From Botryllus schlosseri (taxonomy: Eukaryota): 64,000 nt of DNA. The stretch spans positions 10,726,001-10,790,000 of the forward strand of contig CM119376.1 in NCBI GenBank assembly GCA_051294905.1, written 5' to 3'. The translations under genes were made by a program, and so were the position numbers. The notes beneath the pieces were generated by a model that saw nothing but the letters and a program-made list of their open reading frames with translations, did no database searches and was not told the DNA's origin. This document shows positions 11,801-56,929 of the stretch, in pieces; position 1 is the first letter of the stretch, and each line of letters opens with the position of its first letter.

Positions 11801-14800
11801 CCCTCAAGTTTTGGTTCAATTTTAGCTCTATTGTTGCGCAACCTTCATATCTGTCTTGTGCATTTGTGCAAACATGAATTGTAGGCATGTGATAAACAGC
11901 AAAATAATGATTTTTCTTGAAAATAACATCATACATTTATGTAGAAATTGGAAGACTTTTATTTTTCCAAAGCTAATTTTGCTGCTGTATTTTTTGAAGT
12001 ACGTGGTCGTGTCATGAAAATTCGCGTCTTCGTTTTGGTATGAACGAGTAGTGCCGAAAACCATTTCTACAAAGACAGATGGAGGCTAATGCTATATTAA
12101 CGCATAACGCTTCCGACGATACTTTTGGTGTGATCGTAACATTTATGGCGCCAAAATGAAGAAACATATATTTTATGAACATATCACATCTAGCATCTAG
12201 CGCAGCGACGGGCAACATACGGACCGCGGGCCGGATTGGGCCCGCGACGGCATTTTGATCGGTCAAAATGGACAAATTTTATGCGCCAAATAATGGATAC
12301 AAGTTTTCCAACCTGAGAAAGACTGTCATTAAACGACTTGTTCTGTTCGGGTTTACATATATTTTTACGAGCAAACATTTTCTACCAGGAACAATTGAAC
12401 ATTAACAAGAAAAGGCTGCATAACAATATAGCTGGTGATGTGAATTTCAGGTTTGGAGCGTAATGCTTTGATAGCAACGAACCACTCCTTGTTCATCAAA
12501 AAACCAGCCTTGTCGATAGAGGGCATCCGCAATAAGAATGCGCCAAATTAGGGAAATACTTCGGAAATTTTTATTTCAAACGACTGTACACTAATTTGAT
12601 GAGACTGACAACTTCAAATCGAGAAGGTTTCGCAGACATTACGAAGTCTACATGATTGACGTTACTATCTCCATATTTTTATACTTTTCACAAACCCAAA
12701 TATAACGTCACTAAACAGCAATGTGTTTGTATCAGCAGGTTAATGGAAAATTGGCAATGAAAATGAATATCCACACTGCAATAGTTCATGTCAGACAATT
12801 ATTATGATGATATGAGTCATTAGGTTTTAGCAGTTGTGGTGCGAAACTGCATCATGCTTTCTCAAATTAAAAAATAAAATAAAAATTAGGTTATCAACCA
12901 TTTAAAAAGTTTAGAGGTCTCGCGGACCCCCTGAAATTGCTTCGCGGACCCCCGGTTGAGAACCGCTGCTCTAGAAACAAGATTATAATTTATTTTACCT
13001 TACCAGGCAATTGAACCACAACGAAATTACATGCATCCACGAGAACAGCCTGCGCTCGCTGAGACGACTCGAATTCCTCACCTTCGATAACAACAGAATC
13101 ACCACTTTCTCCCCGCAGAGTTTCTCGCACCTCGCGCGGCTGCGCACATTGTAAGGCGGCGCTGACCTTGGAAAATTCTTCCTATCATACTCAAATCCTA
13201 AACTTTTCAGCCGTTTTCATCAAAACCCGCTGAACTGCAACTGTCATCTCAGCTGGATGGCGAACTGGCTTCGCGAGCTCCCTGGGGCCGGACTGTACAC
13301 GCAATGCGCCGAGCCGTCGCACCTTCGCGGAACTGAAATCAAACACTTGCAAGCCAGCGAATTTGTATGCGAAGGTGTGTGAGCGATAGATGTCAATTTG
13401 GTCTTCGTGCGTCTGTGGAGATAAAGTTAAGTCATTACTAGGGCTAGGCCAAGGCTGAGCGATCCCATTCCGAATCGAGTGTTCGAGTATCACTCATTAT
13501 GACATCATCATAGGATGGATATATACTTTTTACGCCACCACAAAGAAAGTAATGCCAATTTTACATCGCATTAAAAAGAATTTCTTCTTTTTTTCGATGT
13601 ACTTTACCACAATGCTGTAAGTAAGTTGATCATGACTTCATAGGAATGTCATTTCCAGTATCGTGAGGATCTTTCTACTGCATGTTGTGGACGCTTCGAC
13701 ACTATCAATCGCGGTGTCAATGTTTCCACGCTTGGAAAAGGTATCGAAACTATAATTCTCGTTAAACTCGTAGGGGACAGTGACGTATCATTTAAGTCCC
13801 CGACAAAAATTGTCTATCACTACAAATAATGCTAGATTCGGAATATTGGACTTATCGAATTATTGCGCCTGGCCCTGGAATTTAGAATTGGATTTGGATC
13901 TGCAACCGGGAACAGAACTTGGATTTGAAAATATTAAACCCACTCATCTCTCCTCTTTAGCTTAGAATAGCGCGTCCACTGTACAATGTACAAGGTCACG
14001 CTCTTGGCGACGCCTTGGGCAGCGCGATGAACTTTACCTGACTGGACTTAACTCCCGAATTGACCCGCGACATGCGCTGTTCCGCTGTCATTTCGCAACA
14101 TGTCATGTACAAGAGTCGGAAGTTGAACAGCAAAGCCGTCTTGATCTCGTGTTATCTCAAAATAACGGCCGATGCGCTGCCAGACAATGTGTCTGAGTTA
14201 ATCGGGCGCGTCGAGCAGGTAGCGATTATGGAGAGTTTGCTAAATTGCGGCGTCGCCCGTCGCCGCATAAACACGGGGTGGATTTCAAAGGCACCGATAA
14301 GTATCGGTTGGGATCGATCGGACGCCGGAATAAAAGAGGGGGTCGGGGCGTAATCGTTGTCGGGGCCCACCCGCGACAATGTGAGACGATCGATGTTTGA
14401 GGGTAATAAAATTCCGGGTTCATTATCTATAAATGATTTATGAGCTCAAGTTGAGTTCATATTCTGAACTTCTCGCAACGCCAGTGTAGCATTCCATTCA
14501 CGTATTCTCAATGGCGAATATAAAGGCTTCTCTGGCTGCAATGGGTCTAACTAAGAAGACTATAGGAGTCACACTAAGACTGGTCGCATTCTCAAATCCA
14601 AATCTCGAATGCATTACGTGTTATCTCCGAATCCAAATCGTGAACGCAAATGCAACTCAAACTCATTCGTTGGTTGAATGAAATATAAAAATTACTTCCG
14701 TGACCAAATCCTAAACATCGTAAATTGAAATCGTTTTCGAAAATTTAAATTCAGTCCGTTGAATCCAAATTCATGATCAAATCCGAGTATATTTCACAGG

Positions 14801-17800
14801 GGCGTCCCAGAGACCCACGTGCTCCTTGGATTCTTACTGTCCGCCCGCGTGCCGATGTCTGGACGGCGTGGTCAACTGCATCGATCAAGGACTGACGTCA
14901 CTTCCTCCCTCGTTACCGTCTGACGTCACTGAGCTGTTCGTAAACTGTTATAACCCCAATCGTGTGTTGCTGTCTTAAACGATGATCGCTTTTAGGCGCT
15001 TGGAACAGAATCAGATCCGGGTCATACCGCCAAGAGCTTTTGCTAGATACAAGCAATTGCAGAGAATGTGAGCATGATTTCACGTAACGCTTATTTTGTA
15101 GTCTCATGGGCTTGGTGTGTAAGACAGGCAAATATGGTTCGAAATCTTGCCCTTGTCAATCATAACTTTGTACGAATTGAGGTGGTACTATGAAAACGGG
15201 GATAATCATGATAAAATGCGTTTCTCTATTACGCTTTCTCTGCAGGAAATACCTTGGAATATCTCGTAGGCAGAAGCAAAGCTCTGTGTAATTTGTTTGG
15301 ACAAACCATTCGCTATCTTCGGCGAATCGCACAAAATTCGGCATACGCCGGCTGTTTGGGCTAAGAAAAGAATACTTTTCGTCGTACGTTTCGTGTCGTT
15401 ACGTCATGATTCGAGCTTTGTTTTGTTAGCCTCCGCGATCTCCGCCGTTATGAGAGTTATTCTCGATATTTTTCCGTCGGAAAATTGGATTACCCGACCA
15501 GGCCGCACTAACAAAGGATCCGGAATTATTTGCTCCTACCAACAATCGACCACACGCGATACGGCTAGTAGGAAACCGTACTGCAGATCCTTATTTTTTC
15601 TACACGAAGGCATTTTGTCGTGAGCGTAATTCCATCGCTGGTCAAGTGGTCAGCCTGTAGTTTTCTTTGTTAATACGATATTATAGGGGTTGGGGTTCAA
15701 ACATCTGAACGCGTTTAGGCCGAACAAACGTGAGTCCACCGGCTACTTACATCACGATTTCAATCCGACCCTCACACTGTGAACCTTGATCAAGTCAAAA
15801 GTCGCATGTCGCAAGTTACGAATCCATTCCTCATTGGATTATAATAGGTGGGACAGGTCCCATTAAAAATCTCGGGTTCATAAGGGGATCGCGTCATGTG
15901 TAATGGCGATTATCCGTTTGTTGACTGATGATATCATCAAGACGCGCGGTTCGCCGGGGCTCTCGAGCGAAATTAAAATCTCATCAAGACATCACTACTG
16001 AGGAAAAGCTATCAAAACACGCCTCTCGTCGGAGAATTATAATTTGATTGATTAAGCTAATAGGATTTGAAAAGCTAGAGGATGTTCCTTGTTGCAAGAG
16101 CGCCACTTGACGCAAAGCGCAATGCATTCCTTTCGGTGAAATCACGGGTTTTCTATACGGAGACAGTCATCGGGCTACGTTAACCCAGCCAGTCTTGGAC
16201 AAATGGATCAGTTTTTCCAAATTACATTAGAATTTTAATTATAATTACACAGTTCTTTATTCTTCAAATTAGACTGGAATTCGAATTATATCTACACTGA
16301 TTTCTCTAAATTAGATTGCAATTAGAATTGTAGCTACACATTTTTTCAATTAGATTGGACTTAGAATTACAAATCATAGTTCATTGTCATAAGCACGATA
16401 ATGGCAAATGTCTTTACAGAAAACTTGGCGCGTTTCGCACTATACAGTTTTCCTGAAGCATTTTCGGGAAACCCAAAAATTAGATTAGAATCAAAATTAA
16501 AGCACAGAAGCATTGAACAAATTAGATCAGAATTAGAATTAGAGAAAAGAAACATTTCACTAATTAGATTTGAATTAGATTACTGACATTTCGTCCTAAT
16601 TAGTCTAATTGCTCATGTCTGCCGCTAGCGAGGGAGTCGGTGCTGTAATCGCGCGAGTGAATAAGCTTTCGATAGAGCCGTTTGCTTTTCTGAAACACAC
16701 ACTGTCCATTACTTTGTGCCTGATTTCTATCGAATTACGTGAACGACAGCTGTCGTCAGTTCTTCACAGTCCTGTGTCCTGCATCCCGACCCAGGCTGTC
16801 ACACGATCCTACTTGCGTGACAATCTTGGGCGTAGGCTTTCTCGGTATGACTTACGGTCCTCGGGCAAGATTATGCCTAACGCGATCACCGGCTCGGATT
16901 TCACGGTTATCGACATTTCGCCTTCGTTTTCAGAGACTTGAGCAATAACATGATCGCCGAAATATCCGAAGACGCATTCCAGGGAACGAAGCGTCTGATT
17001 TCGCTGTGAGTTGTAATTTAATTTCTCGGACCACCCACCGTCGTGATTCCTATGGAGCAACGCAGAGCGAGCCTGTTCACGTTGGGATTTGCCCCGCTGG
17101 TCGCGACTTCTTGCCTTACATGGTCGTTGTTACTATTTGGTTTAGCATCTGTTGGATGTTTGGGAGTTTGTTTCTATAACAAATATTGCTAAGTGTCAGT
17201 TGGTGACCGTGAGAATGGTTGCTATTTGCAAACCACGGCGGTAATGAAGCAGAGTGTAATTGGAACCAGAAATACGTCATTATTGCGCCGCTACACATAT
17301 CAGTAACCTATACAAACCCTACATGGCATTCCAAAGGCTGCGTGATAATCTAAGCGCCGTATAAGTTCATAATGATACTAGCTTTGGAATCAAACATCGA
17401 TCGCAAATACTATTATGTAATTACAGACGTGGTCAAAGATGTAAACGGTGCTACTCGTGTATACTAGTTGTATACTTTAAGAGAAACCTAGTTGAGTACT
17501 TTGAAAAGGTAGCAGTACTTTGATACGGTCCCCATCCGCGTAATAATACCAACCTAATATTATGACGCGTGTTCGGTTTCATTGCAGAATTCTGTACGAG
17601 AACAACATCGCCAGCTTGCCTCGAAATGTATTTTCTGGACTGTCCAAACTCGAACTTCTGTGAGTCCGCATTTACGACTTGAATATAGGCTTTTGATTTT
17701 CAGTAGCGATAAAGCAACCTCGATTTTTAGCCTGTTGAATGCAAACAAGATATCCTGTCTGAGACACGATGCGTTTGACGGACTGTCTTCTCTCAAACTG

Positions 17801-20800
17801 CTGTAAGTAACGACATTATACCGCGTAACACACATACGTTTCATAAAATGCATTATCGCCAGGTCGCTGTATGATAACAAGCTGCAGACGATCGCGAAAG
17901 GCACATTCAAAAGTCTGAAAGCAATTCAACATCTGTAAGTGTCGTGAAAGCAATTGTATCGCCAATGATATAGATGCGCGGCTTTACCCTGCAATTTCTT
18001 ACAAATACTCCCCATCTTTCTTCAGACACTTGGCTCAAAACCCGTATATTTGCGATTGTAACATGCGATGGATCGCTGACTTCCTCCACGAACATCCGGT
18101 CGAAACCAGCGGGGCTAAATGCGCCGCCCCGCGCAAGCTCTCTAACAGAAAACTAGGGAGCATCAAAGCGAGAAGATTCAAGTGTGACAGTAAGCGTTTG
18201 ACGGGTTTCAAAAAGTATACCAGTAGTTGGATGTTTCTACGCCTATGTAGCAAAGAGTGCACGTCCGATTTACTACCAAAGATATGCGATACTTCGACCA
18301 ATTATATTTTTGAAAAGTACTTGCTTGGAGTTACTTTCCAGACCTTTGATTCGCTACTTGTACTTGGGGTATATAGTTTTGGCATGTCTTATAGTAACCC
18401 CTAGCTCTGCTTGTAATTTCATTTGAATTTCTGATTATATGTGTGGCGTGTCCATGTGCTTCGGTATAACCATGTTCAGTGTCGCTAACGCACTCGCACC
18501 TTAACATGGTCACATTGAGCGCAAGGTCACGAGATGCAAGCTTTCTTCATTGCGGAATGCGCACTGATTTCTTTACGTCACTGTATTGTCTCCAAGCTCA
18601 CACCATTCGTTACTGTTCAGACGGTAACAACTTCCCGTCGCCGTACGCCGGCGAATGTAGCCCCGAATCGGAGTGCCCGCCGAAGTGCAGATGTGACGGC
18701 ACTGTTGTGGATTGCTCCAATCAACAGCTAACAAGCATCCCCGACAACATTCCCGCGTATACCACAGAGCTGTAAGTTCGACGAGTTGTATTTAATAATA
18801 CAAAAACGTGAATAGTATATTCTCATTGGAATGAACCCAAATGTTTTCGGCTGACACTCGTCAGGGGTAATCGTCAGCAATTATAGTAGAGAATTGGAAA
18901 GAACATTGTTCTCTGCTAGTTGCTGACGATCACCTCTGACGAGTGTCAGCCGAAAATATTCGGGTTCATTTCAACGTGAATATACCATTCAATTGTATAT
19001 ATTGAAGCTCTGTACCTCCAAGAAGTTATTCAAATAACTAAAAAATGTTCGAATACCGTGTGCTTCACAAATTTTCAAAACTTCACCATTGCGCTTTCGC
19101 ACCCATTACAATGAATGAAGGCGGTAAAATACCTCAATCCTTATGGAAATAAACCCATGAGGGTATAGGTAGTGTTTTCCAGTACCAACCCAAGAAGACG
19201 CAAAAGGTGGTATCGTTGAACAGAACCCACTACACCACGGAATATGACTCCATAGGCAGACTTGGACAACTAGATAATTATAGTTGTCTAATTTCACTAA
19301 ATTAGAGCAAAATGCCAGTAATCTAATTCTAATCTAATTTGGAAAAGCTGAAAATTTTCTAGTTGTCCAAGTATATGCTTGGATAACTAGATAATTATAG
19401 TTGTCTAATTTCATTAAATTAGAGCCAAATGCCAGTAATCTAATTCTAATCTAATTTGAAAAAGCCGAAAATTTTCTAGTTGTCCCAGTCTGTCCATAAG
19501 GATTGGTGTACTTGGCCCGTTTTCAGTTATACGCTGCTATTGGAATAGGAGTGAAATTTTGCACCTTATTGAGTAAATCCTGTGAATACACCTATTTTTC
19601 TCCCATGTCTTTACTGTAGGTAGACGGAAGTTTCATTTTCAAATCGTCATCTCAATTTCAGAAATCTTGCCTTCAACGATATTGAGACCCTTTCCCGGCT
19701 TGATATTTTCAAGAAACTTGCGAATTTGAAGAAGATCGATCTGTCCAACAATAAATTGTCGGCCATCGAGGAAGGCGCTTTCAGTGGCGCGCACAGCGTT
19801 TTGGAATTGTGAGTTTACGGAGTGTAGGACGAATTTGTAATAGAAATTGGGCAGGCGTTATACCTTGATGTTGTATTTTAATCTGTTTCTAATACCGTTG
19901 TCTCTCGGTTTTAATCCATTCGGTGTCGTGTTTCACAAGACTAAATACCGATCAAACACTCATTCTAGCCGATGTGGGCGACCATCAGGGTGTCTTACGC
20001 GAAGCGTGGAATCGGTGCTGCTCAGTGCTCAGTTAGCCGTGTCCCCAAATAGCCCACCACAAATAAAACTCCATCTAAAGTTCGCCGGCGTGTCGGTATC
20101 TGAGAATGTGGTTGCCATAACTTGAGTTACATCAATTATAAAATCTTTAACTGCCTTACTACATTATACGCGATTGACCAGCTGAGAAAAATACATTAGG
20201 CACAGATTTTGGAAGCATTTCTTCACGAACACAGGTCGTGGTTACGGTACACGCCTCCGACCTGCGTGAATTCTTTCAATAATTCGCTGCTCAAGTGGCC
20301 ATCACGTCCAGGTGGTTGCTAAAAACAAAAACTTCGGAAGATGTGGGATTTGTCGACTGCTCTGAATTCCATTAGCGACTAGATCAACATTGACTCACTG
20401 TATAAGCTCATTTGTTCTTACAACCAAACGCGCCATGTGCTTCAGATCTGACAGGGCATGGGCCGTGAGTGTTGTTTTTCGGTGATGATATTGACATGTT
20501 CTAATTGATGACCTTACAAGGACTATATGTGTTGCGTCTCGGAATTCTTTCACTAGTAAAATAACTACCTCTGATCCCCGTGGCCTTCTTTATAAGTCAT
20601 TGTTTTCGTGGCTAGGTGCTGCGTTGAATGATTACCGAATGGTAAAGTTAATGCTGGCTGCTTTTTGGACGGACATAGTAAATTACCGATTCTTACATAT
20701 CTCGAAAAGATGGGGGATTTCAGCTTCCAATAAGAGCTTGAAATTCAAATCTATACAGCCGGCAACATTCAAATACCTTAGGAAATGAGTACGGCAAGGG

Positions 20801-23800
20801 AATATCGGTGCATGCTTATATACTTATGCAAACATCGCAAATTCAAATTCGGTCAAATTCATCCAGTAAATAGTTCTGGTACGTTGATCTCTAAAACTTC
20901 TTTACTGTTGTTAGACCGTTTAATGATATCGGCCTTTTGGAAGGTATCGCCATGGCAGACAAAATCTCTCTATTCTAATTTTCTCGTGAATAAATTCGCG
21001 GACGAAACCGTAAAATACCTCTCCGTCCATTAAGCATTCCGGCTAAGTTCGCGTACCACCGTGACCGGTGACCCTTGTAATTGTTGAAATCATCAGTAAA
21101 CATTTATGTCAAATTATTCCTCACCCACAAATATAATAGACTAATGGACAGGTGGGCCTCGAAAACATTTCGAATTTGGGTGATTCACGACCGTCGACGT
21201 ACGGGCGTTCAAAGTTTACGCGCGGGAACTGTGTGGAAAGATATTTTTTTCGATACTGGTCATAAAATTCATTTGAGTCACCGTTGTTTGACTTTACTCG
21301 GTTTCATTTCTTTTAAAAACTCCATTTCGTCAGTTGGCAAAGTTGAAGGTTATCACAAATATTACTTCGCTTTCACACCTGGATATCAGTTGCATCCCAA
21401 ATAAATCGGGACTTGTCTTCATAGTTCAGTTGATCCATCGTTACGGTAGCTGGCATATTCCGCTGTTTTACGCAATCCGAGACCAGGAGACGTGACCTGT
21501 GTTTGTCTTCTCAGGTGGATGAACGACAATGAACTTGAAAATTTGAAGGGATCCATGTTCTCGGGACTGACTAATCTCCGTACTTTGTATGTTTTCTTTT
21601 CTGCGCGTACGGCGGGATCGAATTACTCACGACTTGGATTCGTTTATTTCAGGATGATCCGCAATAATCATCTGCGTTGCGTAAATAATGAGACATTTGC
21701 GGGCCTGTCCACTATCACTCATCTTTCGTTGTATGAAAACAGAATTACGAGCATAGTGGAGGGGGCGTTCGATAGCTTGTCTTCGATGACTTTACTGTAA
21801 GTATTGTAATACATTGATTCTGCGGAGTTTACATTGTTACTGCGCCGGTTCCAAATGACTTATCTTATTCATTCTGTGCTTAAACACAAAAACCACATAT
21901 CTAACATAATGTTCGAGCATCGGTGATTCAAATCTACATGTTAGTTGAAAAATACATGTCTTTAGTCCAAGAAAACATGAGCTCACTTCAAATGCACTTT
22001 CGTTCACCATTGAAATCTGCGTCACTAATCAAATCATACACTAATCAAATCACCCAAACGCTGCAATTTTTTGTGTAAAGAAATTCACATTTTGAAAAGA
22101 AAACACGGCGATTTCGATTCTACAACTATATTATCCGTTCTTTATTTGAGTGCACTGAAAATGTCAAGCTTCCCAGTGACAATTTCGATTTAAGATGACT
22201 GCCCATATTTGTGTACTTGCTGAGACATAAGTACGTATATTCATTCGTAATAAGTCGGTATACAAGTAACAATTCCGTACAATATACGGAGCCTCGCTCA
22301 ATTATCTTAATACAACCCAATACTGAAAAGTTTTCAAAAATGAAAGTCGCTCATTTTTACATGAAATATGTCGTTTTAGACCACGATCAAATATATGAGT
22401 GCGCACAATATACATAATCTCTCATGACTAACCAAAATGCAACCAAATACTCCAATTGCGTAATGAATGAAATTCGTTCATTTTTGAAAACATGACCTTT
22501 TCGATTGCATTTCGACGACTTCGCTTTCCGACTGAATGATTGCTAGTCTTTTCTGTGCTTATTGAAGAGCAGAGGACATTTAGTCCATTTTGGACCCATA
22601 TTCCAATAAATTAGTCGGTAAAATATACATAGTCACCCATGATCAACCATAATGCAACACAATACTCTATTTAAAAAAAATATTAGTTCATTTTTAAATA
22701 AAATATGGCGTTAACGATCGCGTTTCGACTACTTTAAACGCGCATTGACAACTATTATTTCTCACTGAATCGTTGTCAATCTTTTCTATGCTTACTGAAG
22801 TACGGAGGATAAACCTCCTCCCGTCAGGTATGTCCAACTGTCTTCGAATTGACTGAAATTCATCCCCGTCGCCGGCTGAGATCTCGAATTGTTCCATAAC
22901 AGAAATCTCCTTTCCAACCCGTTGGTGTGCGACTGTCACCTGCTATGGTTGTCCGCCTGGCTACGCACCGGCACCTTCAAGTCGGGCAATCCGCGCTGCC
23001 ACGAGCCGTCGATGCTGCACGGGTTCCCGGTGTCCGACATCAACCCGCAGGACTTCAGGTGCTCGCCCGAAGCGGCGTCGAAGCCGCCGACTTGCAAGCC
23101 GGAAATGAAGTGTCCGGAGAGATGCGTGTGTGAGGGTGAAGGTAAGGGGGAGTACTTGATATTATGAATTGGTATGTAGCTCAATATCGCCCTTCGGAAA
23201 CTAAACTGTGGACCATAGGCGGCAGATTTATTCAGTTGCCATGATACAGGGGCTATTTCACATGATCCTTATGGCAATTGTGATCAACAAAATGATGCAA
23301 ATTTATCCCAAAAACACTCTGCACTTTTCGAAATCCAAATTACTAACAGTCAATAGTGTTGCCTAAAATCTGTTGAAGTAGAAATGAGAGTAGTCCAAAA
23401 CACTATCACTTGAATACGTATACTGTGTAGTGCACATAGGCCAAACTGTGAGTTCTCCGAAAGGGTAGAAGTAACCTTCCATCTTACTGACCCGCTTCGG
23501 TCACAGTGTGACCGCAATCAATGTATTGCTGCCTGGAATGAGCTTGCTGTATTCTTTTCTATGGTTCCGCCCGAAGTTTTGTAAGATTTGGGAACCTTAT
23601 CGGTTTTATTTCAGGTACAATCGTCCGTTGCGTTAACGCTGGGCTCACCGCATTCCCGGTGGACGACATTCCAACAACAGTCACCGAACTGTATTTGAAT
23701 CTCAACAAGATCAAGCTCATACCGGCGTCTGTAAAGCGATTTCGGAAGCTCGAGATACTGTAATGCAGTCCGTTATGCCAACATCGACACAACTTTACAA

Positions 23801-51313: not shown

Positions 51314-54300
51314 ATGCCGTCTAAAGATTCACCAAGAACCGCAACTGCCTCCGATGTCAAATTGGATTTATATTTCCTGATTGCGCAATTCCTCAAGAAC
51401 GGCCCGTGCCAGGAAGCTGGGTCAACTCTTATAAAAGAACTCGAACGCAATGGCTTGTTGCACAGGAGTTTGGATTGGACCGGAAGTCCTCGTCCGCCTG
51501 ATTTTGCGCATTCCACATCAAGGTTTAGGGATATACCGCCGGATTATCTATTGAAGCTGTGTGAAAGAATCGGTCCTGTTTTAGACAAGACACTGCCACC
51601 GCCAGTACCTTCACATCCATCATTATGCTCGTTAGGGAGGTACTCCATGCTACGAGATGAAAAGACTGTCTCAACAACACAGTGGAATGCGAGATCTTTT
51701 TCTGCATCAATAGGCAGAAAGCCGTTAGTCCCTCCTCAAAATTTTATCAAATCTCCAAATTGGGCTTACGGAATTTTTGGTCGTGAAAATGGAGGCTCGC
51801 GTTTCAAGAATTTGCTCCGGCCTATCCAAACTTTATACCAACAAATGAAATTGTACCAGCGCATATTGGGACATTTGTCGTCAGTGTATTGTGTTTTGTT
51901 CGATCGCACGGGCACACGGATATTCACTGGGTCCGACGATTGTTTGATAAAGTCATGGTCCTCCAGCCAAGGCCGTCTTCTTGCCACATTTCGCGGGCAC
52001 CAGTCTGAAATCTGCGATATGGACATCAGCTACGAAAACACAATACTAGCGTCAGCGAGTTGTGACAAAGAAATCCGTATTTGGGATGCCAAAAACGGAA
52101 AGCCAATTACCATTCTTCAAAGTCATAGTGCAATGATAACCAGCGTTGAATTCAGCCCAATGGTACAGGGAAATACGCGTTACCTCATCAGCACCGGCCG
52201 AGATGGTAATGTTGTGTTTTGGGTTTGGAACGTGCAAACATTTAATTTTGAGTCACAGCCGCACAAATTCCAGGAGAGAAACAGGCCCGGGGTTGCTATG
52301 TTGTGTTCGTCATGCAGCTCGGGTGGGCGTTTCATTGCGGTTGGGGGGTCGGATAATCTCGTTCACATTTACCATATTCCATTTGAGCATGACGGCGGTA
52401 GCGCGATAGGTCCTTTGACTATCGCGGAACAGGATGAACATACGAATACGGTTGATAGCATTTGGTTTTCGCACGAAGGCTTGAGACTTGTGAGCGGTTG
52501 CAAAGATGGTACTGCCAGAATATGGACTTTTGAATTTTCCACCTGGACATCGTTGGTTCTTGACGTGTCTCGAACTTTTGACTCCCCGTTAGATCCCGTA
52601 ATGAATGCCACCAAACCTAATACCTCCACCTCGAAATCTGGCAACTCATCAAAATCCCAGAGTAAAGAAAACGCCAACAGAATCTGCGTCATTATGGTGG
52701 CTTGGGATTGCTGCGATGAAAACGTGATGACGTCTCTCACAAATTTCACGATCAAGGTCTGGAATTCAAACTCGAGAATGTTAGTCAGCATCTTGAAAGG
52801 CCACACCGACGAGGCGTACTGTTTAGAGCCCCATCCGATGGACAAGCGGGTGCTGTTAAGCGCGGGCCACGACGGCAATGTCTTTTTGTGGGATGTGATA
52901 TCTGGCATGTCGTTGATGAATTTCCATAATATGTTGGAAGGGCTAGGGCACGGTGCTGTGTTTGACGCCAAGTTTTCAAGAGACGGTCATTCATTCGCTT
53001 GTACAGACTCACACGGGCATTTACTTATATTCGGTTTCGGCGATGGGAAAGTCTATCAAAAATGCCCTGTACAACAATTTTTCCACACTGATTACAGACC
53101 GCTTATTCGCGATCAACACGGGTACGTTTTAGATGAGCAAACCCAACAAGCGCCTCATCTTATGCCGCCTCCTTTTCTCGTCGATATGGACGGCAATCCG
53201 TATCCGCCCGAATTGCAGAGACTTGTCCCGGGCCGGCAAAGCTCGAATGATTTGCAGTTATTGCCCAATTTGGTGGTGCAAGAAAATGACGCTTTCGAAG
53301 TGATCGATGTTGAAAATATCCCAGATGAACCGCAGCCTGCACCAGATGCTGCCGCCAGGTCTGCGCTCGATCAAAGGATTCAACAATTGATAAATTCAGA
53401 ACCAGTGGAGGATAGCGATGAGGCGCCGCCTGCAGGTGAGCCCGCTCCGTTTGCATCGCCTAGCTCATCGGTTACTTTACGCAGAGAGGGTGACACTGCT
53501 GGCGTGCGGCAAATGCACCCAAACGCGCCTCGAAGTCAGGTCGCCTCTATGGCTGACATAGTGGCTTTAAACCAACGAACCATCACGCCACAATTCACGG
53601 ACGAAGAGCAAGCGCACCGTACGGCGGTTCGGAAAGAGAAAGGTCACGCTGAGTTGCAATGGTACAGGAGAGAACGGAAGAAAAGACGTCCGGTTTCCCA
53701 TCGCAGGCTTTCGCGAGACGCTCCAAAAGAACTGGAGACGCGGAGGAGGATTAGACACACGGTTCGGCCGCGTTACAAAGAACCGTCCTGCGATGACGAA
53801 AATACAGACGATGATCGCAGCCGAGAGTTGCGTAGAAGACTCATTAGCGTCATACCTTCTCACGCGCATCGGTACAGCACAAGATCGACTGCTCCAAGAT
53901 CGCGACGTTTATCCGTTCCTGAAAGCATTGATGAAGAACCTTTGGATATCGACACGGTAGACGCCGTGTCTACTAGCGAACATGACGAAACTTCAGCGGA
54001 TTCGTCCAGCTGTGAAGATTACAGCGAAAAAGCCAAGATAATACGTACAAGCCGCAGACGGGAACAGCACAAGCACCGTAAAGAAAATAGGAAGAGTAAA
54101 AACCAGGGTGTCAATAAGTTTATCAGTAACGGCTTACGGCGTAGTCAACGACAAAGGAAGGTACCTAATCGGTTACGTAACACTGAGATCGGTGATTCAA
54201 GTAGTGCGGATAGCGAAGACAATGATGCAAATATTCCGGCATCGCCTTTTTTGACACCAGACAGTCGTAATGGGAATGCTCTAAAAGTGCCCGGTCGCAG

Positions 54301-56929
54301 AAAACCGAGAAAGCAACGGATCGTTTCAAACGCGTCGAGCACTCTTGAATTGTCCGACTCTGAAAGCAAAAACGCGATCATAAACCAGCCAACGACGTCC
54401 GCGCAGTGCAAAACCGAAACTGATGTGCAATCCAACGGGAATGAACCTACCTCATCAAAAGCAAACGTTGCCGTAAAAATCAAAAGCGAAAACCCAAATC
54501 CAAATCAAGTCGCTCCCCAGTGCTACCTCCCGCCGGACTGGATACGGCGGTCTACCCCGTGCATCTTTCCGTACGTGCCACAAATCGATGACGAAGTCAT
54601 GTACATCCGTCAGGGCCACGAAATGTACGTGAACGAAGTGACCAAACATCACGTCTGGTCGATCGGAAACACAGAGTTGTGTTATGCGAAGTATCCGGAC
54701 ATTAGTTTCGCCGAGCCTTGTCAGGTCACTGGCATCGCGTACAAAGTGGGACCGCCGACATTGTGCGAAGTGGAGCTGCATAGAATCAATTTGAAATTGT
54801 CCAAGAAATCGACGATCACCGTTTGCTATCATGACATGCCCAACGTTGTCGATTTTCTAATTCTAAAAGATAAGTATGACGCCAGCATCTCCAAGACTTG
54901 GTCGGAAGGCGATTATTTCCGGTCTATAATAGACGACACTTGGTGGTATGGGACAGTGGTCGCGAAAAACCCAATCGATCCCAAATATCCGCAAAGCCAC
55001 TTTCAAGAAGTCCACATACTATGGGACGGCGACAACGGCCTGGCTGATTACGATGACCTGTCTCCGTGGGACATGGAAGTGGTTCCGCGTGGTGTGGTGA
55101 CGCGGTCTCATGATAACTCAAAAGGTCACGTTCGCCTTGACGATAAAGAATTGTATGATGCTGTGTGTTATAAAATGAAAGCGTCAGATTGGGCTAGCCG
55201 TAACGATAGCGATTCCGACGATAATAATCCTTCAGAGGCTTTGAAAAAGAGAATGGTACGCGAATGCAAGCGTATCGCCCGTGGCGTGCAGCATCTTATT
55301 TTACAGCAGCAGTTTGACGATTTTGTGCAGCCCGTCGATACCGTGCAGTATCCGGCTTACCCATTGTATGTCGCGTTCCCAACTGATCTGTCTGTGATTT
55401 TAGAGAGAGTGAAGAATCACTATTACCGCCGGCAGTCTGCGATATCCTGGGAGATAGCGCAGCTCGAAGGGAACGCGGTCACGTTCAACGAGCCCGATTC
55501 GTACATTGCCAAAAAAGCGAAATTACTGCATCAAATACTCGATTGTTTTGTGAAAGACCCAAACTGCCGTAATATCGACGATTTGCAGTCCAATTTTCTT
55601 GACGAAACGGCTGACGACGCAGATTCTTCTTTTCACGGAGAAAACTCAGAATCAGGCGAAGATCAGAAAGTTTTGTCAGACTCGGAATGCGAATCGGAAT
55701 CGGACGAAAACCACGCTACGGACTCGCAGGACGTGAGCGAAAACGTAACTACTGCTGAAGAAGAGGAAGATTCCGGGAAAGTTATTTTATGGATGGAAGA
55801 ATGTAAAAAGTTACTGGTGGACGTGATGGGAGTGCAGGATTCGCGTCCTTTCCGGCGCAGGCAGGTTAAAGACGAGGAGGACGATATCGCGAGCGATACG
55901 GAATCAACTGCCGTCGACTTGACGACGATCGAAGGCCGGCTGTTGAATTCCCAGTATGAAAACCCCGAGCGTCTGCAGAATGACGTGCAGGATATGTTCG
56001 CGTCATTCAAAAGCTCAAATCCTTCGAGAGAAGGCCGGTCGATGCTCGCCAGGCTGGCTCCGCTTATGAACTCGAAAATTGATGTTATCGTGGAAGACTG
56101 GAGGAAGAAGCAGGCGGCAAATTCTGCGGTCGCCACGCGGAGGTCGAGACGTAATGCATCGCGAACAGAACGATATCTGATTTCAGAGACCCGAGTGTCA
56201 CGCGTTTATCCCATGCAGGGCGCGCGTGTTTTGAGGTCCCAACGCTGCAGTCGCAGTATTTCTAATTTAAATGATTTTGTGGAGGAATCGGACTGTGTTC
56301 GCGACGACGGTGATCTTGTCGAGTCCAGCCACGGAGAGTACGAAATAGCCGTGGCAGCGCCTGGAAAACGCAGCTTGCCAGTGTCCGACGACGGTCAGGG
56401 AGACGCGAGTCTGTCCTTGCGACTTCGCAAGAAACGCAAAAAGAGTTCTGGGTTCAAAGACGATTCCAGTGACGATCGGGACGATGTTCCGGTCCAGACG
56501 CGACCTTTTTTGAAATCGAATGGTCGGTCGGACGTAGGCATCGCGGACGCATCGGATAATTTGCATAATCATCGTTTGCGAGAGAAAAGAAGCAAGCCGG
56601 CACGATTCGTGGATTACTTCGACGTTGAACCGGACCGCGAGCACAATGTGAAGGAGTCTAAACCCGTGCGCAAATCGTCCCGGTCTAGAAAACCGATCGG
56701 GCTCTATGTTGATTCCGAATCTGAGAGCGAAGCGTACAGGGATATAGCCGAAGACGTGGAAATAGACTGTGGGCCTTCGGCCCCGGAAGCGCACTTGGTT
56801 CCGAAAAAGAGCTCTAGATTCCGAAACGGATCGTTCGCGTACGAACGGACACACGCCAGACCGTCCAGGTCAGCGCGTAAGCGACGTGTGTCCAGTCATT
56901 CTAATGTTAGCGACTCTGACGGGAGATGA
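51314..56929 (+). CDS. BRWD: Bromodomain and WD-repeat protein (BRWD1/BRWD3/PHIP family), single-exon ORF, 1871 aa
   Basis: N-terminal DLYFLIAQFLKNGPCQ; WD40 repeats (GHLSSVYCVLFDRTGTRIFTGSDD, HPMDKRVLLSAGHDG); QFFHTDYRPLIRD; PYVPQIDDEVMYIRQGH; cryptic Tudor (GDYFRSIIDDTWWYG...SPWDME); bromodomain 1 (PTDL...YYRR...TFNEPDS); diverged bromodomain 2. Confidence 0.97.
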   Translation: MPSKDSPRTATASDVKLDLYFLIAQFLKNGPCQEAGSTLIKELERNGLLHRSLDWTGSPRPPDFAHSTSRFRDIPPDYLLKLCERIGPVLDKTLPPPVPSHPSLCSLGRYSMLRDEKTVSTTQWNARSFSASIGRKPLVPPQNFIKSPNWAYGIFGRENGGSRFKNLLRPIQTLYQQMKLYQRILGHLSSVYCVLFDRTGTRIFTGSDDCLIKSWSSSQGRLLATFRGHQSEICDMDISYENTILASASCDKEIRIWDAKNGKPITILQSHSAMITSVEFSPMVQGNTRYLISTGRDGNVVFWVWNVQTFNFESQPHKFQERNRPGVAMLCSSCSSGGRFIAVGGSDNLVHIYHIPFEHDGGSAIGPLTIAEQDEHTNTVDSIWFSHEGLRLVSGCKDGTARIWTFEFSTWTSLVLDVSRTFDSPLDPVMNATKPNTSTSKSGNSSKSQSKENANRICVIMVAWDCCDENVMTSLTNFTIKVWNSNSRMLVSILKGHTDEAYCLEPHPMDKRVLLSAGHDGNVFLWDVISGMSLMNFHNMLEGLGHGAVFDAKFSRDGHSFACTDSHGHLLIFGFGDGKVYQKCPVQQFFHTDYRPLIRDQHGYVLDEQTQQAPHLMPPPFLVDMDGNPYPPELQRLVPGRQSSNDLQLLPNLVVQENDAFEVIDVENIPDEPQPAPDAAARSALDQRIQQLINSEPVEDSDEAPPAGEPAPFASPSSSVTLRREGDTAGVRQMHPNAPRSQVASMADIVALNQRTITPQFTDEEQAHRTAVRKEKGHAELQWYRRERKKRRPVSHRRLSRDAPKELETRRRIRHTVRPRYKEPSCDDENTDDDRSRELRRRLISVIPSHAHRYSTRSTAPRSRRLSVPESIDEEPLDIDTVDAVSTSEHDETSADSSSCEDYSEKAKIIRTSRRREQHKHRKENRKSKNQGVNKFISNGLRRSQRQRKVPNRLRNTEIGDSSSADSEDNDANIPASPFLTPDSRNGNALKVPGRRKPRKQRIVSNASSTLELSDSESKNAIINQPTTSAQCKTETDVQSNGNEPTSSKANVAVKIKSENPNPNQVAPQCYLPPDWIRRSTPCIFPYVPQIDDEVMYIRQGHEMYVNEVTKHHVWSIGNTELCYAKYPDISFAEPCQVTGIAYKVGPPTLCEVELHRINLKLSKKSTITVCYHDMPNVVDFLILKDKYDASISKTWSEGDYFRSIIDDTWWYGTVVAKNPIDPKYPQSHFQEVHILWDGDNGLADYDDLSPWDMEVVPRGVVTRSHDNSKGHVRLDDKELYDAVCYKMKASDWASRNDSDSDDNNPSEALKKRMVRECKRIARGVQHLILQQQFDDFVQPVDTVQYPAYPLYVAFPTDLSVILERVKNHYYRRQSAISWEIAQLEGNAVTFNEPDSYIAKKAKLLHQILDCFVKDPNCRNIDDLQSNFLDETADDADSSFHGENSESGEDQKVLSDSECESESDENHATDSQDVSENVTTAEEEEDSGKVILWMEECKKLLVDVMGVQDSRPFRRRQVKDEEDDIASDTESTAVDLTTIEGRLLNSQYENPERLQNDVQDMFASFKSSNPSREGRSMLARLAPLMNSKIDVIVEDWRKKQAANSAVATRRSRRNASRTERYLISETRVSRVYPMQGARVLRSQRCSRSISNLNDFVEESDCVRDDGDLVESSHGEYEIAVAAPGKRSLPVSDDGQGDASLSLRLRKKRKKSSGFKDDSSDDRDDVPVQTRPFLKSNGRSDVGIADASDNLHNHRLREKRSKPARFVDYFDVEPDREHNVKESKPVRKSSRSRKPIGLYVDSESESEAYRDIAEDVEIDCGPSAPEAHLVPKKSSRFRNGSFAYERTHARPSRSARKRRVSSHSNVSDSDGR

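What the first reader, a model, noticed from the sequence alone, without database searches (positions are those of the whole stretch)
18447..18531. Divergent miR-218 hairpin in the Slit intron that appears syntenic with the vertebrate miR-218 host intron
Seen: the 431-bp intron after the LRRCT2 exon (HLAQNP...FKC) contains AUGUGCUUCGGUAUAACCAUGU (18454-18475). It shares the complete miR-218 seed (UGUGCUU) and the last 9 nt (UAACCAUGU) with vertebrate miR-218-5p, differing at nt 1 and centrally (CGGUA vs GAUC). It pairs over about 25 positions with 18503-18531. With a 2-nt overhang the predicted star starts AUGG, like human miR-218-1-3p. Known: vertebrate miR-218-1/-2 lie in introns 14/15 of SLIT2/SLIT3, repress Robo receptors and mark motor neurons. 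Inference: the Slit/miR-218/Robo ligand-plus-receptor-repressor unit is present in this apparently invertebrate chordate. It would then predate vertebrates, with a lineage-specific mature sequence that identity-based miRNA searches could miss.
Basis: partly seen in the sequence, partly recalled or inferred. Interest (0 to 1): 0.9.

Follow-up and report, generated by a model that had tools for sequence, protein, structure and literature searches.

The report
Sea-squirt miR-218 inside a Slit intron
A sea squirt's Slit gene carries a slightly diverged copy of microRNA miR-218 in what appears to be the same intron that hosts it in vertebrates, so this gene-within-a-gene arrangement is probably older than vertebrates, though a miR-218 was already predicted in another sea squirt in 2017.

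Summary
AUGUGCUUCGGUAUAACCAUGU lies at 18454-18475 (+), in a 99-nt hairpin (18440-18538, -36.5 kcal/mol, z -2.4). The hairpin sits in a 431-nt phase-1 intron between the Slit LRRCT2 and LRRNT3 exons, sense to Slit.

It is not a chance match. About 9e-5 exact seed-plus-tail matches are expected per window. The whole precursor also aligns to the published Halocynthia roretzi mir-218 hairpin (Wang et al. 2017). Identity is 32/37 in the 5' arm plus basal stem and 25/28 in the 3' arm, while the loop has diverged with indels. The mature sequences differ by three substitutions, and every shared base pair survives.

The intron has the same position and phase as in fish slit genes. Published exon numbering puts mir-218-1/-2 in that intron, but I never saw a vertebrate mir-218 in fetched DNA. 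The amphioxus Slit locus shows no counterpart.

The window comes from a stolidobranch ascidian; Styela clava gives the closest protein match (67%).

Rfam's mir-218 model scores only 14.6-16.7 bits against a threshold of 62, so standard annotation would miss it.

Expression and Robo targeting are untested. Verdict: a real, probably functional miR-218 orthologue, and a new member of a known kind. The conserved Slit host intron is the useful new point.

The parts
18026..18189 (+). Slit exon encoding the C-terminal cap of LRR domain 2 (LRRCT2: [11 protein letters not shown]...RRFKCD plus 1 nt)
   Evidence: ORF and translation. tblastn with mammalian SLIT3 P0156 aligns it to residues 433-485. It ends at FKCD + 1 nt | GTAAGC.
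18190..18620 (+). Host intron: 431 nt, GT..AG, phase 1
   Evidence: Sequence. Fish slit contigs L003 and L004 have the same codon position and phase (FRCS + 1 nt | GTAAG/GTAGG).
18440..18538 (+). mir-218-like primary hairpin: about 35 stem positions including the basal stem, with a 26-nt apical region
   Evidence: Fold -36.5 kcal/mol, z -2.43. Aligns to the Harore-mir-218 precursor across both arms. nhmmer with the two-sequence profile hits only here in the window, E 1.4e-31, though the window sequence is itself part of that profile. Best Rfam sub-threshold hit is RF00255 mir-218.
18454..18475 (+). Predicted 5p guide AUGUGCUUCGGUAUAACCAUGU (seed UGUGCUU)
   Evidence: Sequence. 19/22 identical to the H. 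roretzi form from its second base. Seed and last 9 nt match the Rfam mir-218 consensus. A UG lies 14 nt upstream at the base of the stem. The 5' end is inferred, not measured.
18506..18527 (+). Predicted 3p (star) AUGGUCACAUUGAGCGCAAGGU
   Evidence: Derived from the fold assuming a 2-nt 3' overhang. 19/22 identical to H. roretzi, but its seed differs at position 6.
18621..18771 (+). Slit exon encoding the N-terminal cap of LRR domain 3 (LRRNT3: [37 protein letters not shown]...)
   Evidence: ORF. tblastn with SLIT3 P0156 aligns it to residues 485-537.

Best explanation
The hairpin at 18440-18538 is the orthologue, in a stolidobranch ascidian, of the miR-218 gene. It lies on the sense strand of a 431-nt Slit intron between the LRRCT2 and LRRNT3 exons, which is the intron position that hosts mir-218-1/-2 in vertebrate SLIT2/SLIT3. 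The likely mechanism has three steps. First, the hairpin is transcribed as part of the Slit pre-mRNA, or from its own promoter as in vertebrates. Second, Drosha cuts it about 13-14 nt above the basal junction and Dicer trims the loop. Third, the 5' arm AUGUGCUUCGGUAUAACCAUGU is loaded into Argonaute and guides repression of mRNAs carrying AAGCACA seed sites. Shown here: the sequence, the fold, the homology, the intron position and the strand. Inferred: processing, the exact ends, the choice of arm, expression and targets. The three central substitutions relative to Halocynthia (positions 9, 11, 13) fall where miRNA-target pairing is least constrained, and they keep or improve the stem.
For: 1. 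Exact seed plus 9-nt tail match, with about 9e-5 expected per window.
2. The full precursor aligns to the published Harore-mir-218 hairpin. Identity is 32/37 in the 5' arm plus basal stem and 25/28 in the 3' arm, with the loop diverged and carrying indels. This pattern is typical of a miRNA gene under selection.
3. Both hairpins fold alike (-37.3 and -35.1 kcal/mol). Of 26 shared pairs, 23 are invariant, 3 changed on one side and still pair, and none is broken.
4. The 5p seed is identical in the window, Halocynthia and the Rfam consensus, whereas the 3p seed differs at position 6. This points to 5p as the guide.
5. The stem has about 35 positions with a UG at -14 at its base. By general knowledge of Drosha substrates this is canonical geometry.
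6. It is on the same strand as Slit. The intron position and phase are identical to fish slit genes. The literature places mir-218 in SLIT3 intron 14 and SLIT2 intron 15, with SLIT2 exon 15 being the AKEQYFIP mini-exon at the end of D2. Spliced and unspliced vertebrate fragments show FRCS|AKEQYFIP|GTEDY.
7. It is single-copy, not part of a repeat family.
Against: No expression data exist for this species. The fold z-score is modest (-2.4). Rfam RF00255 scores 14.6 bits on the + strand and 16.7 on the - strand, against a gathering score of 62. The Halocynthia entry is itself a computational prediction; its only read support is Ciona small-RNA reads mapped across species (58 + 55), and the same paper calls miR-218 absent from Ciona. 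Only one other tunicate sequence was available, so there is no double compensatory change and no tree. I never saw a vertebrate mir-218 in fetched DNA, so intron orthology depends on exon numbers taken from papers. A CNNC motif sits at about +19 from the predicted 3' Drosha cut, slightly outside the canonical +16 to +18.
Confidence: 0.8

Rival explanations
1. It is a homologous but decaying relic. The hairpin descends from mir-218, but in this lineage it is no longer processed or no longer functional, and the central substitutions are the start of its erosion.
For: The mature sequence carries three changes in its centre relative to Halocynthia, and five differing positions plus a length difference relative to vertebrates. 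It scores far below the Rfam threshold. Surveys did not find mir-218 in Didemnum, and the Didemnum paper also reports it absent from C. savignyi and Oikopleura. Wang et al. note its absence from Ciona in miRBase. Loss in tunicates is therefore plausible. There are no expression data.
Against: The seed, the 3' tail, the basal stem and the 3' arm are 86-89% identical between ascidians assigned to different lineages, while the loop is scrambled. Every shared pair is retained and the central changes add pairs (C-G and U-A). Free decay would hit the arms and the loop equally. The failed surveys used the same kind of model, which also fails on this hairpin.
Confidence: 0.13
2. It is a chance resemblance: an ordinary intronic stem-loop, such as a splicing-related structure or a foldback transposon remnant, that happens to contain miR-218-like words.
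For: The neighbouring intron holds a large foldback element. The fold z-score is only -2.4. A looser pattern allowing 3 mismatches is expected 0.75 times per window. An unrelated family in metagenomes also matched a seed/tail/arm pattern.
Against: About 9e-5 exact matches are expected per window. Homology extends over about 100 nt to a published ascidian mir-218 precursor, including the 3' arm and basal stem that were not part of the original match. It is single-copy. It sits in the expected Slit intron on the expected strand.
Confidence: 0.03
3. The functional RNA comes from the opposite strand, as an antisense transcript through the Slit intron, or the 3' arm rather than the 5' arm is the guide.
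For: The minus strand also folds (-32.8 kcal/mol) and scores slightly higher with Rfam mir-218 (16.7 vs 14.6 bits). The two arms are equally conserved against Halocynthia (19/22 each).
Against: On the minus strand the seed would be UGCGCUC, not UGUGCUU (alignment). The minus-strand fold is weaker (z -1.67). The 3p seed differs between the two ascidians, whereas the 5p seed is invariant from ascidians to vertebrates. The Halocynthia hairpin aligns in the sense orientation.
Confidence: 0.04

Closest known systems
Harore-miR-218 of Halocynthia roretzi (Wang et al. 2017, BMC Genomics 18:314, PMC5399378; scaffold S248:20705-20812, minus strand)
   Same: Same hairpin architecture. Shares AUGUGCUU + 5 nt + UAACCAUGU in the 5' arm, ACAUGGUyACwUUGAGCGCArGGUCACG in the 3' arm, and the basal stem UGUGUGrCGUGUC.
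   Different: Three substitutions in the centre of the mature sequence (U9C, A11G, C13A) and three in the 3' arm. The loop is unalignable. The Halocynthia paper never mentions Slit, so a shared host is not known. That entry is a homology prediction, not a sequenced miRNA.
Vertebrate mir-218-1 (SLIT2 intron 15) and mir-218-2 (SLIT3 intron 14); Rfam RF00255
   Same: Seed UGUGCUU, 3' tail UAACCAUGU and the 3'-arm core ACAUGGU...AGC.C..GG. Sense orientation in a Slit-family gene, in the intron after the LRRCT2 exon with the same phase (literature).
   Different: The first base is A rather than U. The centre is CGGUA rather than GAUC, so the mature sequence is one base longer, as in Halocynthia. 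It scores only 14.6-16.7 bits against a gathering score of 62. There is one copy in a single Slit gene rather than two in paralogues. The host intron is 431 nt, and I found no AKEQYFIP-like mini-exon in its three reading frames. Robo targeting and motor-neuron expression are documented in vertebrates only.
Other ancient intronic miRNA/host pairs (mir-33/SREBF2, mir-126/EGFL7, mir-140/WWP2)
   Same: A sense-strand intronic miRNA kept in the same host gene across vertebrates (one search lists these pairs in human, mouse and chicken).
   Different: Here the pair extends to a tunicate. Co-expression with the host is untested.

Membership tests
MIR-218 microRNA family | Seed (nt 2-8) UGUGCUU in the 5' arm | tested here: met
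   18455-18461 reads UGUGCUU, identical to the Rfam consensus and to Harore-miR-218. This assumes the 5' end is at 18454.
MIR-218 microRNA family | Similarity of the rest of the mature sequence and of the star arm | tested here: met
   The last 9 nt are identical to the vertebrate consensus. 19/22 match the Halocynthia 5p and 19/22 the predicted 3p. The centre differs.
MIR-218 microRNA family | Imperfect hairpin of about 35 bp that can give a duplex with 2-nt overhangs | tested here: met
   Folds. The structure is shared with the Halocynthia precursor and no pair is broken.
MIR-218 microRNA family | Reaches the Rfam RF00255 gathering score | tested here: not met
   14.6 bits (+) and 16.7 bits (-) against 62; no hit at gathering level. 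RF00255 was still the top-scoring Rfam family in the intron. This threshold is an annotation cut-off rather than a biological definition.
MIR-218 microRNA family | Orthologue present in a related species, with arms more conserved than the loop | tested here: met
   Alignment to the Harore-mir-218 precursor. Only one other tunicate sequence was available.
MIR-218 microRNA family | Small-RNA reads from both arms with fixed 5' ends (the MirGeneDB-style criterion, recalled from memory) | not testable with these tools
   No read data for this species. The only indirect data are Ciona reads assigned to the Halocynthia hairpin (58 + 55).
Slit-hosted mir-218 (conserved host intron) | Sense strand, in the Slit intron between the LRRCT2 and LRRNT3 exons | tested here: met
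   Exon map against SLIT3. Identical junction codon and phase in fish slit contigs.
Slit-hosted mir-218 (conserved host intron) | Vertebrate mir-218-1/-2 lie in that same intron | tested here: inconclusive
   Papers give SLIT3 intron 14 and SLIT2 intron 15, with SLIT2 exon 15 being AKEQYFIP at the end of D2. Vertebrate fragments show FRCS|AKEQYFIP|GTEDY. The vertebrate contigs I fetched were SLIT1 or too short, so no mir-218 was seen directly.
Slit/miR-218/Robo feedback loop | AAGCACA sites in the Robo 3' UTR and repression of Robo | not testable with these tools
   No Robo gene lies in the window. AAGCACA occurs 3 times in the window against 3.9 expected.

The most novel reading that the evidence does not exclude
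The whole regulatory unit may already have existed in the last common ancestor of tunicates and vertebrates. That unit is a Slit gene carrying in its D2/D3 intron a miR-218 that represses Robo-type receptors and is active in motor neurons. It would have arisen after the split from amphioxus. The vertebrate SLIT2 and SLIT3 copies would then be its duplicates from the genome duplications, and SLIT1 would have lost it.
Probability: 0.35. Interest if true: 0.7.

Novelty: new member of a known kind. Interest (0 to 1): 0.5.

Why it matters
miR-218 is a well-studied vertebrate miRNA. It is reported to be motor-neuron enriched and to form a feedback loop with Slit/Robo signalling. As I recall, without having checked, curated miRNA catalogues date the family to vertebrates. 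The only tunicate record I could find is a computational prediction in Halocynthia that gives no genomic context.

This hairpin adds two things. It is a second ascidian orthologue. It also shows the miRNA sitting in what the evidence indicates is the same Slit intron as in vertebrates. Together these would date the host-guest arrangement to before the tunicate-vertebrate split, hence before the vertebrate genome duplications. No counterpart was found in the one amphioxus Slit locus examined.

It makes the origin of this circuit testable in ascidian larvae, which have very few motor neurons. It also warns that surveys using the Rfam model, or near-identity to vertebrate sequences, report false absences of mir-218 in tunicates.

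Tried and rejected
1. Fetching the orthologous Slit intron from other tunicates failed.
- A representative search with the LRRCT2 exon returned Slit proteins from annelids, rotifers, amphioxus and vertebrates, plus vertebrate exon fragments. None of those I looked up was tunicate.
- Two word-based searches with intron-spanning ORFs found nothing.
- P0142 and P0124 were short marine-metagenome contigs without a usable intron.
- The window's own large ORF is not on record.

2. A metagenome scan with a seed/tail/3'-arm pattern gave 8 contigs. All belong to one unrelated family with a 16-nt spacer, so it is a chance match.

3. I could not see mir-218 directly in a vertebrate contig.
- L003, L014 and L016 turned out to be SLIT1-type paralogues, which are not expected to host it.
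- L004 (fish slit2) and L017 were too short.
- No mir-218 was found in the contigs scanned; L017 was too short to be worth scanning.

4. An 11-mer UUGUGCUUGAU lies in a different amphioxus Slit intron (L005:7355). It does not fold as a miRNA (z -0.49) and gives no Rfam mir-218 hit, so I rejected it as chance.

5. Walking from the Styela clava BRWD3-like gene (P0197) to its Slit gene was not attempted. The intron lies about 33 kb from that gene in the window, and the flank limit is 10 kb.

6. The mirtron reading is rejected. The hairpin is 250 nt from the donor and 82 nt from the acceptor.

Full report
**1. The observation**

It lies in a 431-nt GT..AG intron (18190-18620). Upstream is an exon encoding [11 protein letters not shown]...RRFKCD (18026-18189). 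Downstream is an exon encoding [37 protein letters not shown]... (18621-18771).

- Folding 18430-18545 gives one long hairpin of -37.3 kcal/mol (z -2.30).
- The trimmed hairpin 18440-18538 gives -36.5 kcal/mol (z -2.43), and 4 of 200 shuffles fold as well.
- The minus strand folds less well (-32.8 kcal/mol, z -1.67).
- The stem has about 35 positions: UGUGU/AUGCA, CGUG/CACG, CC/GG, UGUGCU/AGCGCA, CGGU/AUUG and ACCAUGUU/AACAUGGU, separated by small internal loops.
- About 9e-5 exact matches of seed plus 9-nt tail, with a 4-5 nt spacer, are expected per 64-kb window on both strands.
- The hairpin is single-copy in the window.

**2. Family databases**

Rfam finds nothing in the window at gathering thresholds. 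A permissive scan of the intron ranks RF00255 (mir-218) as the top family on both strands, but at only 16.7 bits (-) and 14.6 bits (+) against a gathering score of 62. The near tie between strands reflects the near-palindromic nature of the duplex. The exact seed UGUGCUU is on the + strand only; the minus strand reads UGCGCUC.

**3. The key comparison**

Wang et al. 2017 (PMC5399378) predicted a miR-218 in the ascidian Halocynthia roretzi, UAUGUGCUUUGAUCUAACCAUGU. Their Additional file 1 gives the 108-nt precursor. Aligned to the window, it matches over 18440-18541.

| Region | Identity |
|---|---|
| 5' arm plus basal stem | 32/37 |
| 3' arm | 25/28 |
| Apical loop | Aligns only with gaps |

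- From the shared A, the mature sequences differ at three positions (U9C, A11G, C13A) with no indel.
- The two hairpins fold alike (-37.3 and -35.1 kcal/mol).
- The consensus structure has 26 pairs. Of these, 23 are invariant, 3 changed on one side and still pair, and none is broken.
- In the window the centre forms C-G, G-U, G-U and U-A pairs, whereas Halocynthia has an internal loop there. The substitutions preserve or improve the structure.
- The 5p seed is the same in the window, Halocynthia and the vertebrate consensus. The predicted 3p seed differs between the two ascidians. This favours 5p as the guide.

Conserved arms, a conserved basal stem and a scrambled loop are the signature of a miRNA gene under purifying selection.

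**4. Limits of the Halocynthia record**

That entry is a homology prediction. The read counts listed beside it (58 larva, 55 gastrula) are Ciona robusta small-RNA reads mapped onto the Halocynthia genome. The same paper says miR-218 is absent from Ciona and Oikopleura in miRBase. The Didemnum genome paper found no mir-218. The word 'Slit' appears nowhere in the paper or its supplements. I found no other paper on tunicate miR-218 in the library.

**5. The organism**

The intronless 1871-aa ORF at 51314-56929 is a BRWD3/PHIP-like protein. Its best match is Styela clava (67% identity over the first 900 residues); the next tunicate is Phallusia at 46%. The window therefore comes from a stolidobranch ascidian. 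It is not S. clava, and the differences in the hairpin show it is not H. roretzi.

**6. The host intron**

- tblastn with a mammalian SLIT3 (P0156) maps the window's Slit collinearly. The upstream exon corresponds to SLIT3 residues 433-485 (LRRCT2) and the downstream exon to 485-537 (LRRNT3).
- Fish slit contigs end this exon at FRCS + 1 nt | GTAAG or GTAGG. The window ends it at FKCD + 1 nt | GTAAG. Codon position and phase are the same.
- In amphioxus the junction lies four codons later, in the same phase.
- Spliced and unspliced vertebrate fragments show ...KKFRCS | AKEQYFIP | GTEDY....
- PMC12607519 states that SLIT2 exon 15 encodes AKEQYFIP at the end of D2. SLIT2 exon 14 is therefore the LRRCT2 exon.
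- Papers place mir-218-1 in SLIT2 intron 15 and mir-218-2 in SLIT3 intron 14, and zebrafish mir-218a-1 between slit3 exons 14 and 15.

The window's intron is thus positionally orthologous to the vertebrate host intron. This last step rests on published exon numbers. The vertebrate contigs I fetched were SLIT1-type (L003, L014, L016) or too short (L004, L017), and I never saw a vertebrate mir-218 directly.

**7. Amphioxus**

In the Branchiostoma belcheri Slit locus (L005, 37.7 kb) the homologous intron is about 560 nt. Four tests found no counterpart:

- Rfam at gathering level over the whole locus.
- Rfam at a permissive level in the intron.
- The seed/tail pattern with up to 3 mismatches.
- nhmmer with the ascidian two-sequence profile.

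An 11-mer UUGUGCUUGAU in another intron does not fold as a miRNA. This is consistent with an origin after the amphioxus split. It rests on one locus in one species, and part of that gene model looks poor.

**8. Mechanism**

- Shown: a conserved, sense-strand hairpin of canonical size inside a Slit intron. It is 250 nt from the donor and 82 nt from the acceptor, so it is not a mirtron.
- Inferred from general knowledge of miRNA biogenesis: the UG at 18440-18441 lies 14 nt before 18454 at the base of the stem, which fits a Drosha cut giving a 5' end at 18454. A GUGU lies in the apical region. A CNNC (CUUC) begins at about +19 from the predicted 3' cut, slightly off the canonical position.
- Predicted: the guide has the seed UGUGCUU and would recognise AAGCACA sites.
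- Untestable here: whether Robo is a target in this animal, since no Robo gene lies in the window. AAGCACA is not enriched in the window (3 observed, 3.9 expected).

**9. Verdict**

It is not the first tunicate miR-218, so the family's pre-vertebrate origin was already implied by the 2017 prediction.

What appears to be new:
- a second ascidian sequence, which shows selection on the hairpin;
- the conserved Slit host intron;
- a demonstration that model-based surveys miss this form.

The Robo half of the proposed unit and any expression remain open. I rate it a new member of a known kind, of moderate interest.

Noticed in passing
window 18809-18991 (+), the next Slit intron: A near-perfect inverted repeat (roughly 18826-18970) whose arms contain CUGACGA...GUCAGCCGAAA-type words, as noted by another first-stage finding (a hammerhead in a foldback). 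Rfam at gathering thresholds reports no hammerhead anywhere in the window.
   Followed up: partly
window 51314-56929 (+): One uninterrupted 1871-aa ORF encoding a BRWD3/PHIP-like protein. Best match is Styela clava at 67% and Phallusia reaches 46%. About 17 kb between the Slit stop (33944) and this ORF holds no long ORF that looked like a gene.
   Followed up: partly
L005 7355-7365 (Branchiostoma belcheri Slit, intron between the LRRCT1 and LRRNT2 exons): UUGUGCUUGAU, the first 11 nt of vertebrate miR-218, occurs here; about 0.02 such matches are expected in the locus. It forms only a 13-bp hairpin (z -0.49) and gives no Rfam mir-218 hit, so it was judged chance.
   Followed up: yes
L014 (Logan contig SRR29536170_235085, 9989 nt): A very compact, apparently sauropsid SLIT1-type gene. 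The LRRCT2 exon, the AKEQYFIP mini-exon, the LRRNT3 exon, further LRRs, and EGF and laminin-G exons all fit within 10 kb. It has no mir-218.
   Followed up: partly
L006-L013 (metagenome contigs): Eight contigs share an almost identical stretch, TTTGTGCTTAyTTGTAACCATGTACACCCTATGGACTGTACATGGTTAGGTGTAC, in AT-rich DNA (36-38% GC). It matched the seed/tail/arm pattern by chance, and its nature was not examined.
   Followed up: no
L005 about 13548-21298 (B. belcheri Slit model KAI8480829.1): Residues 227-492 of the annotated amphioxus Slit protein look unlike Slit, with low-complexity, non-LRR sequence. This suggests a mis-modelled stretch in that gene model.
   Followed up: no
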